Positions 4,117 to 12,113 of a stretch of 64,000 nt of DNA are shown here, piece after piece; within the stretch, counting starts at the first letter, position 1; each line of letters begins with the position of its first letter. The stretch lies in contig JAPDFW010000106.1 in the NCBI GenBank assembly GCA_028826165.1, positions 124,001 through 188,000 on the forward strand, read 5' to 3'. The notes below the pieces were generated by a model, which did not search any database, was not told where the DNA came from, and worked only from the letters and a program-made list of their open reading frames with translations. Position numbers and translations under genes: made by a program. Source of the stretch: Anaeramoeba ignava BMAN. Its lineage: Eukaryota; Protista; Anaeramoebae.

Positions 4117-4244
4117 TAGAACATTTTAAAATTAGTTTCAAAATTTTCTTCTTTTTTTTTTTTTATAAAAGAAGAATAAAAACAAAAAATTTTTTTCATT
4201 TTTTTCATTTTTCATTTTTTTACTTTTTCAAATTCTTTTTTTTT

Positions 4245-4871
4245 ATGAAAGCGACAAGAATAGCTGGTTATACATTAATTGCAACTACTTCATTTTTTGT
4301 TTGTTTATCTATAAAGCAAAATTTATGAAAATTAAAATTAAAATTAAAATTAAAATTAAAATTAAAATTATTTGAAATTAAAAATTAGGCATTACTTTCT
4401 TGGGTATTCCCATTTTTATGGCAATATAAATATAAAGACAAAAGTCAAACAATTTTATGTGGAAATTTTCTCTGTATTTGTTCTGGAAGCGATTGTGAAA
4501 AGCACATGTACGACAAAAAAAAACTAGAAGATTGGAAAGAAGTTGATCAAGATGTTTACAACGGATTATGTGTAAATATATTCTGGACATTACTTGGGTT
4601 ATTATCAATGGGAATAGCAGTCTTAATGCTTTGGAAAAATAAACCTAAACTTTATTATCCAATTATTATCGCTGGATGTTCTTTTTTCCTTGGAATAATC
4701 ACTTTTATCGGGCTGTTTCTTAGAAGTGATACTCATAATTTTTTGAAATATAATAAAGATGATGATGTTTTAACTTGGACTTTTTCTGCTTCAACTGCTT
4801 TTGCAATTATTTCTTTCATTTTGATTATTCCAACTCTTTATTTCAGTGTTAATGGAATAAATACTCATTAG
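4245..4871 (+). CDS. Small four-TM membrane protein (claudin/PMP22-like topology); intron 4299-4388
   Basis: The spliced ORF has TM1, a Cys-containing loop (CGNFLCICSGSDC), then three more hydrophobic helices. Confidence 0.6.
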
Positions 4872-8026: not shown

Positions 8027-11000
8027 TTATTTATAACCTGAAGCATAAGAAATAACACCAATAATTCCACCAAAAACATTTCCCCAAACAATAAGCCAAC
8101 CCAAATGTTTTCGCATAACATCTTCCATAAGTTTCTTAACAACTTGAGGGGTTAATTCTTTAAGTTTTTCAGTCATTAAAGAATCAAGTTCTTTTCTGAC
8201 TCTTGAAATATCAAAAGTTTTAGTAATATCAAAAGTGGAAAGTAATAATGGTGCAATATCAGACCCCATTCCAAGTACAAAGGGTGTTATTAATGGCTTC
8301 AGTGATGATGGATCTATTCCCATCATTGTTAACATTAATCCTTCTGGTCGATCTTTTAATTCTTCTAGTTTTTGATCTATTATTTGACTTACTGCTGGTG
8401 ATTCTAATACTTTTTTGATTTTTTCTTCAAAGTTAATCATTGAAATGAAACTGTTTAATTTTGTAGATATATAATTTTTCAAGTAGGTCTATTACAAATA
8501 AATTTTTAAATATTAATTTTAATATTATAATTTTAATTTTAATTTTAATTTTAATTATAATTATAATTATAATTTTAATTTTAATTTTAATTTTAATTTT
8601 ATAAATGATATTAATTTCAATTTTATAAATGAATTTTAAATTAAATTTTAATTATAATTATAATTATAATTTTAATTATAATTTTGATTTTAATTATAAA
8701 TGAATTTTAATTTTGATTTTGATTTTAATTTTAATTTTAATTTTAAATTTAATTTTATAAATTTAATTTTAATTATAAATGAATTTTAATTTTAATTTTA
8801 TAAATGAATTTTAATTTTAATTCTAATTTTAATTTTAATTTTATAAATGAATTTTAAATTTATAAATGAATTTTAAATTTGATTTCTACTTCATCAAAAA
8901 AAGTCTTCATAATTGTGTTTTTGACTGTTTCTCTAATTTCTTTAAATCTACGAGGAATAATACCAGATCCATATAATCCAGGAATTCTATCAAAAAGCAT
9001 TTTTATAGCAAGCCAATTAGTAATTCCTCCAGCAAAACCGAAAAGGCCAAATGCAAGTATATAATGTCCTGCAGTATTTTGACCTAATAAATTTATAATT
9101 TTATTTTTAATTTTAATTTTAATTTTAATTTTAATTTTAATTATAATTTTAATTTTAATTTTAATTTTAATTTTAATTTTAATTATAATTTTAATTTTAA
9201 TTTTAATTTTAATTTTAATTTTAATTTTAATTTTATAAATTAATTATAATTTTAATTTTAATTTTAATTTTAATTTTAATTTTAATTTTAATTTTAATTT
9301 TAATTTTAATTTTAATTTTAATTCTAATTTTATTTTTAATTTTAAATATTAATTTTAATTATAATTTTAATTTTAATTTTAATTTTAATTTTAATTTTAA
9401 TTCTAATTTTATTTTTAATTTTAAATATTAATTTTAATTTTAATTTTAATTTTAATTTTAATTTTAATTTTAATTTTGATTTTAATTTTAATTTTAATTT
9501 TAATTTTAATTTTAATTATAATTTTAATTTTAATTTTAAATATTAATTTTAATTTTTATCCTCGAAAAATTGAAACAATAAAATTTTATTTTTCAAAAAT
9601 TTAATTAAAGACCCGGAAAAATAAAATTTCATTTTTATTGACGGGGGCGAATTTATTTTCTGCCATTTGGGGAAAATAAAATTTTATTTTTCCAGGTCTT
9701 TTTCCCCTTTTTAAAATTGAAATTTCTCCTTTTTATTTCAAAATAAAATGATATTTGAGAAATTTGGTTTTTTATTGAAAAGTGAGTAAATTCCAAAAAA
9801 TCCTAAAAAAAACCATGAAGAAAATGAAAATGAAGAAAATGAAAATGAAGAAAATGAAAATGAAGAAAATGAAAATGAAGAAAATGAAAATGAAGAAAAT
9901 GAAAATGAAGAAAATGAAAATGAAGAAAATGAAAATGAAGAAAATGAAAATCAGTAAAAATCCAAGAATGAGATCCCAAGCATTCAACCTACTGTTACTT
10001 CTTTTCATCAGGGTTCAAGAATGTTGATTTCCAAGTTGTTGCCATGTCTTTCAATGATCTCTTTCGGTCGTGTACTCCAATGTTGATTGATATAATCGAG
10101 TTTGAGGGATTTCCAATTGAGATCCCATTGGGAAATAAAAGTGGAAGGTTTTGGTTTGAGTTGTTCTCTTTTTGATCTAATTTAAGCTGCAATGCATTAT
10201 CAATTGCTTTTTCTTTCTCTAAACAAACTCTTTTATATAATTGGAGAGATGATTCTGATTTATGCCCACTTTTTAATTTCATAATTTCTTGATCTTGGAT
10301 CCCTTGGTTGTATAGCCTCGATACACAAGTTACACGAAAGGAATGTAGACCAATTTTCTTATTAATATTAACTTTTTTGCATAGCTCTTGTAAATGTCTT
10401 CTCAATGTAGGTGCTTTAATTGCTTGGTTTGTAAGGGGATTTCCTGTAAAGTTTTTCTTTTTGAATGATCTAAAAAGCCGATTGTCTGGATTCGTGGGTA
10501 ACTCTGATCGAAATTTCCAATACTTGCTCAAAATTAAATATGGATCTTTCGGTGAATCTGAAAAAGGAAATAGTTTGACTGTTTTTGGTTCAAAGTTAGT
10601 CACTCCAATTGTTGCCTTATTGTTTTTGCATTCACCTTGTACATACTCTATAAAATCTTGACCATCAATGTGCCCAAAATGAATTTGTGTCAATGCCAGA
10701 TCTGCGATCTCTTGTCCTCTCAAACAAAAATGGATTCCAACTACCATCACCGTTGCAATTGTCAAATGTTTTGGATTTTCTAACCTTAGATATTCCATCA
10801 ATTTAGTTTGTTCAGCTTCTTTCAAATCTTGATAATGCGAAGTAAAACAGTTTCCAGCTGCAATAATTTCTTTTAACCGGTTTTCTACGGTGTTCTTGAT
10901 GTCCTCAAATTCAGAATTTTTAAATCTACGCTAATTAATTTCTTTTGATTCAAATACGATAAAAGGTTTGAGCAATAGGACCGATAAGTTTTAAGTTTGT

Positions 11001-12113
11001 ATTCCTTTCCGTTACTCCTTTTTAATTGAATAAAAAATCGACAGATGGTGTCTTTGAGATCTATTTCTTCGAAAGTAACATTCTCAGCTTTCAAAAATCT
11101 TTTTCCCATTTCTTTCCCATAACAGAAATCGATTTTTGTGTATTTAAAGGATTTTTTTTTTTTTGTACTCCCTCAACAGATGTCATAAGAGACGAATGAA
11201 AATCAAAAAAAAATTTTTTTTCTTTTGAATCCCGAATTAGAAAAATTTTTCTTAAATAGTTTTCTTAAATTTTTTTTTTCTCCTTTTTCGATTTTTCTCC
11301 TTTTTATTTTTATTTTTATTTTTATTTTTGGATCAGATCAATTTTTTGAGGATAAAAATACTATTTGCCCTCATTCGGAAAAATAAAATCATTTTTGAAT
11401 CTCGATTTTTAGCTAAACCATCCGCTCGCCAGGGCTCGCTAAGATAATTTTGGCTCGTAAACGAGCCACCGCTAAAAATCTCGATTGCAAAAATAAAATT
11501 TTATTTTTCCAAATTTGAGCAAATAGTTTATCTTAATTTTAATTTTATTTTTAATTTTAATTTTAATTTTATAAATTAATTTTAATTTTAATTTTAAATA
11601 TAATTTTAATTTTAATTTTAATTTTAATTTTAATTTTAATTTTAATTTTAATTTTAAATATTAATTTTAATTTTAAATATTAATTTTAATTTTAATTATA
11701 ATTTTAATTTTAATTATAATTTTAATTTTAATTTTAATATTATAAATGAATTTTAATTTCAATTTTATTTTCAATTTTAATTTTAATTTTAATTTTTTGT
11801 TACTTTTTTTTGATTTATTTGTATTAGTGAGAATTAAACCAAGAACCATAATTAAAAAAGTAGTAAAATTGCTCATAAATCCTTTATTAAAACGAGGATA
11901 AATAAAACGTTGAGCACAAGTTTTTTTCTCTTGATTTGTTTGTAAATTTTTTAAAGGGTTTGAAATATCTTCTTTATTATCTTCTTTATTATCTTCTTTT
12001 GCCTTTTCATCATCATCTTGATTATCTTGAGATTCTAAATCTATTTCTGAATTTTTTTTATCATCTTTTTCTTTAGGATCAAGATTGTCACTTGATAAAT
12101 TGTGTTCAGACAT
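8027..12113 (-). CDS. DUF445-like membrane protein (exons 12113-11804, 9083-8890, 8488-8027)
   Basis: The spliced product contains FGFAGGITNWLAIKMLFDRIPGLYGSGIIP and ends MRKHLGWLIVWGNVFGGIIG. GT-AG introns at 11803-9084 and 8889-8489. Confidence 0.8.
9817..9951. repeat. 15-bp tandem repeat (GAAGAAAATGAAAAT)x~9 inside the element, downstream of the YR stop
   Basis: Visible directly. Confidence 0.9.
9995..11186 (-). pseudogene. Tyrosine recombinase (Crypton/DUF3504-like), ~397 aa when two 1-nt frameshifts are corrected
   Basis: Catalytic motifs HFCLRGQE (R), CKNN (K), HSFR (HxxR), SGHKS (H) and LQLY (Y) are all present. N-terminal segments NTQKS..KW and NGKEYKLKTY lie in upstream frames, broken at A5 runs (11100-11104 and 10917-10921). 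Confidence 0.8.

What the first reader, a model, noticed from the sequence alone, without database searches (positions are those of the whole stretch)
9552..11532. Crypton-like YR element carrying an internal inverted copy of its own circle junction (ICR-like, without RT)
Seen: the left terminus 9552-9573 (ATTTTTATCCTCGAAAAATTGA) matches the reverse complement of 11338-11359 at 21/22 positions. The right terminal ~62 bp (11471-11532) is an imperfect reverse complement of the overlapping segment 11351-11413. So 11338-11413 is an inverted copy of the right-end/left-end junction that excision as a circle would create, centred on the TTATC/GATAA core of the terminal direct repeat. Known: DIRS1-type retroelements have an internal complementary region (ICR) matching both ends, while Cryptons are YR-only DNA elements with short terminal direct repeats. 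Inference: a YR-only element with ICR-like architecture could circularise through a folded single strand (as at integron attC sites), borrow a DIRS RT in trans, or let the YR invert the segment between its inverted sites. This may be an undescribed class of YR element.
Basis: partly seen in the sequence, partly recalled or inferred. Interest (0 to 1): 0.9.

Follow-up and report, generated by a model that had tools for sequence, protein, structure and literature searches.

The report
Crypton transposon with DIRS-like internal junction copy
This is a small, recently mobile DNA transposon of the amoeba Anaeramoeba that encodes only a tyrosine recombinase yet carries the end-joining "internal complementary region" so far described only for DIRS retrotransposons, which suggests that this device serves the recombinase and not reverse transcription.

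Summary

- **The element:** window 9560-11532, flanked by a 5-bp crossover core (TTTAT / TTAAT). It encodes only a tyrosine recombinase (YR).
- **Copies:** a second copy on another contig differs by one substitution plus repeat-length indels and has an intact 396-aa YR gene. Paralogous empty sites fix the ends.
- **The internal copy:** 11338-11413 is an inverted copy of the joined ends, 22 nt of the left end followed by 54 nt of the right end. It lies next to the right terminus, and together they form a ~170-nt fold-back with a conserved tip.
- **Conservation:** three other YR families in this genome (21-38% protein identity) show the same layout with their own sequences. One of them (D) has no left end identified. 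One metagenomic relative also has it.
- **Classification:** the YR belongs to the CryptonA/DUF3504 lineage. No element combining reverse transcriptase with a YR exists in this genome.
- **Comparison:** order, lengths and position match the DIRS-1 ICR (33 + 55 nt).
- **Reading:** a Crypton with a DIRS-type cis-architecture, probably a splint or fold-back that brings the two ends together for the YR.

The scan flagged the same reading on another piece of this genome.

The parts
9555..9559 (+). Left copy of the 5-bp crossover core (TTTAT), shared with the target
   Evidence: The empty paralogous sites hold one TTTAT and the filled site holds two. The flanks of the two copies diverge left of 9554.
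9560..9577 (+). Left-end arm (L), starting CCTCG
   Evidence: Identical in both copies. Its reverse complement is at 11338-11359 (I16).
9573..9596 (.). P1, the first of five palindromic sites: inverted arms of ~10-12 bp around an 8-bp AT spacer, the geometry of loxP/FRT
   Evidence: Local script only. The relic on C131 is deleted exactly between P1 and P5.
9607..9701 (.). Left subterminal fold-back holding P2 (9617-9635) and P3 (9671-9693)
   Evidence: Arms of 29 nt, 93% complementary, 37 nt apart (I6). Family C has the same feature (I3).
9812..9950 (.). Internal 15-nt microsatellite (GAAGAAAATGAAAAT)n, variable between copies
   Evidence: D2. The sister copy has a 21-bp length difference. The same repeat occurs at more than 100 other loci.
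9995..11186 (-). Tyrosine recombinase gene. It is frameshifted in this copy and intact (396 aa) in the C146 copy.
   Evidence: ORFs. Homopolymer indels at 10916, 11100-11101, 11148 and 11170 relative to the intact copy. Pfam Phage_integrase E=5e-11. Catalytic R156, K187, H281 and R284 are invariant, and the SGH and Y motifs are present. It matches solved YRs.
11338..11359 (+). L': reverse complement of the left end. This is the first part of the ICR-like region.
   Evidence: I16.
11360..11413 (+). R': reverse complement of the right end, containing P4. This is the second part of the ICR-like region and the inner arm of the right fold-back.
   Evidence: I5.
11414..11470 (+). Tip of the fold-back. 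It holds a conserved core (11420-11447, ATCC-R-CTCG, 6-7 nt, CTCG-Y-TA-R-GATAA) and a small hairpin (11451-11468).
   Evidence: The core pattern occurs only 5 times in the 42.8-Mb genome, always in these elements. It is aligned across families A, C and D. The small hairpin keeps its pairing with a different sequence in D.
11471..11532 (+). Right-end arm (R), containing P5 and ending GTTTATC
   Evidence: Identical in both copies. It pairs with R'. An exact solo copy sits in the C131 relic.
11533..11537 (+). Right copy of the crossover core (TTAAT here, TTTAT in the sister copy)

Best explanation
This is an autonomous, recently active Crypton-type DNA transposon of Anaeramoeba. It is about 1.97 kb long and its only gene is a tyrosine recombinase (YR) of the CryptonA/DUF3504 lineage.

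Shown here:
- It inserts by conservative recombination at a 5-bp AT-rich core (TTTAT).
- Its ends form a complex recombination site. It has five loxP/FRT-like palindromic sites, a ~170-nt terminal fold-back whose tip carries a conserved TTATCC / CTCG-N-CTCG / GGATAA core, and, directly next to the fold-back, an inverted copy of the other end.
- The internal region 11338-11413 is therefore L' followed by R', in the order, with the sizes and at the position of the DIRS-1 internal complementary region.

Inferred:
- The element leaves as a circle.
- The internal region acts as a splint. The right end folds back on R' and the left end pairs with L', so both crossover cores lie side by side in one folded strand (or in an extruded cruciform). 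The YR can then join them, or use the folded junction as its substrate, in the way XerCD uses folded CTX-phage DNA and integron integrases use folded attC sites.
- No reverse transcriptase is needed.
For: - Mobility and ends: two copies have unrelated flanks and differ by one substitution plus repeat-length indels. Empty paralogous sites are present. There is a third, internally deleted relic.
- YR-only: no other ORF has a domain. The catalytic residues are complete.
- The internal junction copy is non-random: 32 against 12.9 +/- 1.5.
- It is conserved with family-specific sequence. Family C (38% protein identity) scores 45 against 12.8 +/- 1.4. Family B (23% identity) scores 22 against 13.4 +/- 1.6, with 0 of 300 shuffles reaching it. 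Family D keeps R'/R and the core in three copies.
- The fold-back is strong as a single strand in A, C and D, with z = -6.0, -8.0 and -8.5. In the consensus fold, 13 of 34 pairs are kept through changes on both sides.
- The core occurs only in these elements.
- A metagenomic CryptonA relative (L070) has a hairpin followed at once by a 15-nt exact inverted copy of a site 157 nt past the YR stop.
- The nearest outside relatives carry DUF3504 and QRICH1.
- The DIRS-1 ICR is 33 nt L' plus 55 nt R' near the right end. It is essential at a step after first-strand synthesis (PMC7192593).
Against:
- The internal copy is not an exact copy of the inferred junction. It lacks or alters 2-13 nt at the crossover in every family.
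- The left end of family D could not be found.
- A source of single-stranded DNA without an RT or a Rep protein is not known for such elements.
- Copy numbers are tiny: 2 full copies of A, 1 of C, 3 degraded copies of D and 2 of B.
- A duplex mechanism would explain the same anatomy.
Confidence: 0.55

Rival explanations
1. Same element, but a purely duplex mechanism. After excision the junction completes a ~215-bp inverted repeat around the tip. The circle then resembles a miniature 2-micron plasmid: two unique segments (57 bp and 1.76 kb) separated by ~76-bp inverted repeats, each holding a crossover core. The YR uses the two inverted sites for synapsis, for inversion, or as alternative integration sites.
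For: - The geometry follows directly from the mapped ends.
- The P sites have loxP/FRT-like geometry.
- In family B the YR gene lies in the opposite orientation relative to the fold-back. Integration through the other site, or an inversion, would produce that arrangement.
Against: - All six copies of the A/C/D clade share one orientation of gene and tip. Free flipping would give about a 3% chance of that.
- The two sites differ at the crossover in every family.
- There are no partition or replication genes.
- The small tip hairpin keeps its pairing with a different sequence in D, and 13 of 34 stem pairs are kept through changes on both sides. This points to selection on pairing, not on a duplex protein-binding sequence.
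Confidence: 0.22
2. A non-autonomous derivative of a DIRS retrotransposon. It keeps the ITR/ICR and the YR gene but relies on a reverse transcriptase supplied in trans. The ICR rebuilds the ends of a cDNA as in DIRS-1.
For: - The ICR matches DIRS-1 in order, size and position.
- DIRS-1 RT can act in trans (PMC7192593).
- RT genes exist in the genome.
Against: - No RT lies inside or beside any of these elements. The RT fragment near family C is LINE-like and lies outside the element.
- Every Phage_integrase hit in the genome is one of these RT-less loci, so no DIRS partner was found.
- Four diverged families keep intact YR genes and none keeps RT.
- The YR groups with CryptonA/DUF3504, not with a retroelement.
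- The YR gene runs antisense to the DIRS-like left-to-right layout.
Confidence: 0.08
3. The internal inverted junction has no function. It would be a fossil of a self-insertion or inversion, a nested fold-back MITE, or an assembly artefact.
For: - Copy numbers are low.
- The genome is about 80% A+T and full of chance inverted repeats.
- Homopolymer differences between the copies suggest long-read assembly errors.
Against: - Two independent copies are identical across the region.
- The fold-back never occurs without a YR gene or its remnant.
- Families with 21-38% protein identity keep the layout, and each internal copy tracks its own ends.
- The scores are 5 to 20 standard deviations above the shuffles.
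Confidence: 0.05

Closest known systems
Cryptons, CryptonA / DUF3504 group (Goodwin et al. 2003; Kojima & Jurka 2011, PMC3212892; Glomhopper 2026, PMC13465315)
   Same: - A YR is the only gene.
- The element is about 2 kb.
- The 4-6 bp terminal repeat is microhomology with the target and not a true duplication.
- A circular intermediate is presumed.
- The nearest relatives of the YR carry DUF3504 and QRICH1. Family B itself passes the QRICH1 threshold.
   Different: - Cryptons are described as having neither terminal inverted repeats nor long repeats. This element has a ~170-nt terminal fold-back, five palindromic sites and an internal inverted copy of the joined ends.
- The YRs of families A, C and D do not themselves reach the DUF3504 or QRICH1 thresholds.
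DIRS-1 and DIRS-like retrotransposons (Cappello 1985 model; PMC7192593; PMC3266345)
   Same: - It has an internal complementary region made of L' then R' (22 + 54 nt here, 33 + 55 nt in DIRS-1), just inside the right end.
- The subterminal sequences are inverted.
- It has a YR.
- It inserts without a classical target duplication.
   Different: - It has no gag, RT, RNase H or methyltransferase.
- It is 2 kb, against about 4.8 kb.
- The inverted terminal similarity is limited to about 28 nt, where DIRS-1 has ~300-bp inverted LTRs.
- The YR gene is antisense to the left-to-right layout in families A, C and D.
- The YR is of CryptonA type.
Folded single-strand substrates of tyrosine recombinases: CTX-phage attP(+) with XerCD, and integron attC with IntI
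   Same: Two inverted, imperfectly complementary site copies about 100-175 nt apart can fold into a hairpin. That hairpin presents a duplex crossover site with bulges at the crossover.
   Different: - Those systems are bacterial, and their single strand comes from phage or conjugative replication.
- Here no source of single strands is known, and nothing was tested.
Yeast 2-micron plasmid (Flp/FRT)
   Same: It is a eukaryotic YR. The inferred circle has two unique segments separated by inverted repeats that each hold a recombination site.
   Different: - There are no replication or partition genes.
- The element is chromosomally integrated with defined ends and target sites.
- No orientation isomers are seen among the copies.

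Membership tests
Crypton (YR-only DNA transposon) | A tyrosine recombinase is the only transposition gene; there is no RT and no DDE transposase | tested here: met
   There is one long ORF, with Phage_integrase E=5e-11, and no other domain. No RT hit lies within the element.
Crypton (YR-only DNA transposon) | Complete YR catalytic residues (R, K, H-x-x-R, H/W, Y) | tested here: met
   R156, K187, H281 and R284 are invariant across six family members, and the SGH and Y motifs are present. The catalytic half aligns to solved integrase/XerA/IntI4 structures.
Crypton (YR-only DNA transposon) | Short (4-6 bp) terminal direct repeat that is microhomology with the target | tested here: met
   One TTTAT in the empty sites and two in the filled site. 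In the window copy the two are unequal (TTTAT and TTAAT), as expected for a crossover and not for a duplication.
Crypton (YR-only DNA transposon) | No terminal inverted repeats and no long repeats (as described in the literature) | tested here: not met
   It has a terminal fold-back of about 170 nt, subterminal inverted palindromic sites and an internal inverted copy of the ends. This is the point of difference, not a reason to exclude it.
Crypton (YR-only DNA transposon) | Extrachromosomal circular intermediate | not testable with these tools
CryptonA subgroup | The YR carries the DUF3504 (PF12012) / QRICH1 (PF25561) signature | tested here: inconclusive
   The YRs of A, C and D reach only PF00589. 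Family B reaches QRICH1 at 38.6 bits. A profile of all families finds DUF3504+QRICH1 proteins as its best outside hits, at E about 1e-50.
DIRS retrotransposon | Encodes reverse transcriptase and RNase H | tested here: not met
DIRS retrotransposon | An internal complementary region made of the complements of both termini, adjacent to each other, near one end | tested here: met
   L' at 11338-11359 plus R' at 11360-11413. Also present in families C and B. Compared with the DIRS-1 description in PMC7192593.
DIRS retrotransposon | Long inverted terminal repeats (inverted LTRs) | tested here: not met
   The inverted similarity between the two ends is limited to about 28 nt around the palindromic sites (I10).
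2-micron-type YR plasmid | Replication and partition genes, and orientation isomers | tested here: not met
   There is no further ORF. All copies of the A/C/D clade are in one orientation.

The most novel reading that the evidence does not exclude
The terminal fold-back plus internal complementary region is an ancestral device of the CryptonA-type tyrosine recombinases. It would let them cut and join a folded single strand or a cruciform. DIRS retrotransposons would then have inherited their ICR from such a Crypton-like ancestor and not invented it for reverse transcription. On this reading Cryptons of this lineage move through single-stranded circular DNA, and the conserved TTATCC / CTCG-N-CTCG / GGATAA hairpin tip seen from Anaeramoeba to unrelated metagenomic eukaryotes is their recombination site.
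Probability: 0.25. Interest if true: 0.85.

Novelty: new variant of a known kind. Interest (0 to 1): 0.7.

Why it matters
How Cryptons move has never been shown, and they are described as lacking any terminal structure. The ICR of DIRS-1 is known to be essential, but only within a reverse-transcription model.

An RT-less element with the same L'+R' region, conserved across four YR families, separates the ICR from reverse transcription. It gives a 2-kb, single-gene system in which the role of the ICR can be tested directly: YR plus a folded or a duplex junction. Finally, it supplies concrete cis-motifs (palindromic sites, a hairpin tip) for finding the ends of CryptonA elements, which are hard to delimit.

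Tried and rejected
- **Reads.** No circle, joint or expression evidence could be obtained. Site P1 was analysed only in local scripts.
- **Wider flanks.** Single-copy families were therefore studied with about 1.5-kb flanks only.
- **Left end of family D.** It was not found in the held loci.
- **Near-matches to the right end.** The 3-mismatch matches on C46 and C124 lie inside a duplicated gene and are chance.
- **Nested MITE or assembly artefact.** Rejected. The fold-back never occurs apart from a YR gene or its remnant, and both copies agree.
- **DIRS partner in the genome.** None found.
- **First test on family B.** It was not significant because I had put the long arm on the wrong end. The corrected test was significant.
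- **Outside loci without a palindrome near the YR gene.** L055 (A. flamelloides), L069 and L074 had none.
- **Proteins not on record.** P0016 and P0025.
- **Rfam and bacterial-type promoter scans of the right module.** Nothing meaningful.
Full report
**What is there**

The window is about 80% A+T. The only database protein close to the element's ORF is a hypothetical protein of Anaeramoeba ignava. 9552-9573 against 11338-11359 is 22 nt at 95%. 11360-11396 against 11491-11527 is 37 nt at 81%, and it extends to about 57 nt in the sister copy. The reverse complement of the joined ends aligns across both halves to the interior with a score of 32. The score in 500 dinucleotide shuffles was 12.9 +/- 1.5, and none reached 32.

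**Ends and mobility**

The 42.8-Mb assembly holds one more full copy, on contig C146. The two copies differ by one substitution, one microsatellite length change and homopolymer indels. Their flanks are unrelated.

The C146 copy lies in a high-copy repeat, and paralogous units give empty sites reading ...ATCAAAT-TTTAT-TCTAATT.... The element proper therefore runs from CCTCG (9560) to GTTTATC (11532), with a 5-bp core on each side. In the window the two cores are unequal (TTTAT and TTAAT), and removing the element restores a perfect (TTTTAA)n tract. This fits a conservative crossover in a short, imperfectly matched core better than a staggered-cut duplication.

A third site, on C131, keeps only the right terminal ~24 nt, one palindromic site and a few bases of the left arm. 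The interior is deleted exactly between the outermost palindromic sites.

**The gene**

The sister copy has an intact 396-aa ORF. The window copy carries four homopolymer frameshifts in its first ~90 codons, which may be decay or long-read error. The protein is a tyrosine recombinase:
- Pfam Phage_integrase scores E=5e-11.
- R156, K187, H281 and R284 are invariant, and the SGH and Y motifs are present.
- The catalytic half aligns to solved integrase, XerA and IntI4 structures.

There is no other gene. A profile of the Anaeramoeba YRs finds 14,635 proteins. The ten best outside hits that I scanned all carry DUF3504, and seven of them also carry QRICH1. This is the CryptonA signature.

**Cis-architecture**

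Read left to right on the + strand, the element consists of:
1. the crossover core;
2. the L arm;
3. a palindromic site, P1;
4. a fold-back holding P2 and P3;
5. a microsatellite;
6. the YR gene, on the minus strand;
7. L' (22 nt);
8. R' (54 nt, with P4);
9. a 57-nt tip;
10. R (with P5);
11. the crossover core.

The P sites have ~10-12-bp inverted arms around an 8-bp spacer. R'-tip-R folds as a single strand into a branched hairpin at -37.7 kcal/mol, z = -6.0. The tip holds a conserved core, ATCC-R-CTCG, 6-7 nt, CTCG-Y-TA-R-GATAA. That pattern occurs only five times in the genome, always in these elements.

**Conservation**

A protein search of the genome found about ten further YR loci.

- **Family C** (L033, 38% identity, single copy) has the same order of parts, and its internal copy matches its own, different, ends. 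The score is 45 against 12.8 +/- 1.4. Its fold has z = -8.0.
- **Family D** (L034, plus two degraded copies L052 and L053, and a probable solo right end in L054) keeps R', the tip, R and a palindromic TTTTATC-GATAAAA at the L' position. Its fold has z = -8.5. I could not find its left end.
- **Family B** (two copies 99% alike, 23% identity, QRICH1-positive) also has an inverted copy spanning its junction. The score is 22 against 13.4 +/- 1.6, with 0 of 300 shuffles reaching it. Here the fold-back is on the side downstream of the gene.
- **A B-like locus** (L043) has a 61-nt-arm hairpin whose tip repeats ACTCGTCTCCGACTCG. This is nearly the family D core.

In the consensus fold of the A, C and D modules, 13 of 34 pairs are kept through changes on both sides. 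In every family the internal copy departs from the inferred junction by 2-13 nt exactly at the crossover.

**Outside the genome**

Of the loci fetched for distant relatives:
- L070 shows an 86-nt palindrome followed at once by a 15-nt exact inverted copy of a site 157 nt past the YR stop. This is the geometry of family A.
- L072, L073, L075 (A. flamelloides) and L076 have palindromes of 79 to about 400 nt beside the gene.
- In L076 the hairpins are bounded by GGATAAC...GTTATC, with CGAG-N9-CGAG at the tip.
- L055, L069 and L074 showed none.

These are hints of generality, not a survey.

**Reverse transcriptase**

RVT_1 gives 17 hits in the genome, none inside a YR element. The fragment 0.7 kb from family C has LINE-type motifs. 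Every Phage_integrase hit is one of the loci above. No DIRS-like partner was found.

**Comparison with the literature**

Cryptons are described as having neither terminal inverted repeats nor long repeats, only 4-6-bp direct repeats (PMC3212892; PMC13465315). No palindrome, hairpin or ICR is mentioned for CryptonA.

The DIRS-1 ICR is 88 nt, made of 33 nt complementary to the left end followed by 55 nt complementary to the right end. It lies near the right LTR. It is essential at a step after first-strand cDNA synthesis (PMC7192593).

The element here reproduces that order, those sizes and that position without any RT.

**Mechanism**

Shown:
- insertion at a 5-bp core;
- the anatomy of the ends;
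- conservation of that anatomy.

Inferred:
- excision as a circle;
- the ICR acting as a splint.

In the splint model the right end folds onto R' and the left end pairs with L', which puts both cores side by side. I favour action on a folded single strand or a cruciform, for three reasons:
- selection appears to act on pairing, not on sequence;
- the two site copies always differ at the crossover;
- no orientation isomers are seen.

A duplex, 2-micron-like reading remains a serious rival. It could explain why family B has the gene flipped.

**Limits**

- No read evidence could be obtained.
- Copy numbers are low.
- Single-copy families have inferred ends, not proven ones.

An earlier first-reader note of this scan (s1-686556) gives the same reading for another piece of this genome.

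Noticed in passing
L058:1495-1551 (contig C131), minus strand: Relic of a third copy of family A inside a 35-bp satellite. It keeps only a few bases of the left arm, one palindromic site and the right terminal ~24 nt plus TTTAT. The interior is deleted exactly between the outermost palindromic sites, either by the YR or by repeat-mediated deletion.
   Followed up: partly
L076:29-144, 2306-2420, 4210-4325 (metagenomic contig): Two divergent DUF3504 YR genes are separated and flanked by related ~95-nt hairpin modules. The modules are bounded by GGATAAC...GTTATC, with CGAG-N9-CGAG at the tip. A 405-bp module is repeated 4.18 kb apart at 99.75%. This looks like an array of elements inserted at each other's hairpin.
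   Followed up: partly
L074:408-3091 (metagenomic contig): Short ORFs with RVT_1 (weak) and RT_RNaseH_2 hits lie directly upstream of a QRICH1+DUF3504 YR gene, on the same strand. This is either a retroelement with a CryptonA-type YR or nested elements.
   Followed up: no
L038:820-1204 and 1999-2383 (contig C37): A YR gene fragment (36% identity to family A) lies between two 386-bp direct repeats that are 94% alike.
   Followed up: no
L041:1093-2523 (family B protein, C-terminus): The family B recombinase ends in a CCHC zinc-knuckle-like motif (C-x2-C-x4-H-x4-C). Families A, C and D lack it.
   Followed up: no
P0004 (744 aa, same genome): A YR domain is followed by weak HTH_Tnp_4 and DDE_Tnp_4 matches in one predicted protein.
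   Followed up: no
L002:3477-3976 and contigs C19, C25, C31, C32, C41, C146: The right flank of the C146 copy is a repeat of about 0.5 kb present in several hundred copies at 88-99% identity, clustered on six contigs.
   Followed up: partly
window 9812-9950: The 15-nt microsatellite inside the element (GAAGAAAATGAAAAT)n matches more than 100 other loci in the genome at 70-87% identity. It therefore dominates any whole-element DNA search.
   Followed up: no
L033:3548-3871: A LINE-type reverse transcriptase fragment lies 0.7 kb to the right of the family C element.
   Followed up: partly
L034:500-706, minus strand: By eye, the host ORF beside the family D element looks like the start of a glutamate dehydrogenase; no domain search was run. 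The element lies within about 100-600 bp of its start codon.
   Followed up: no
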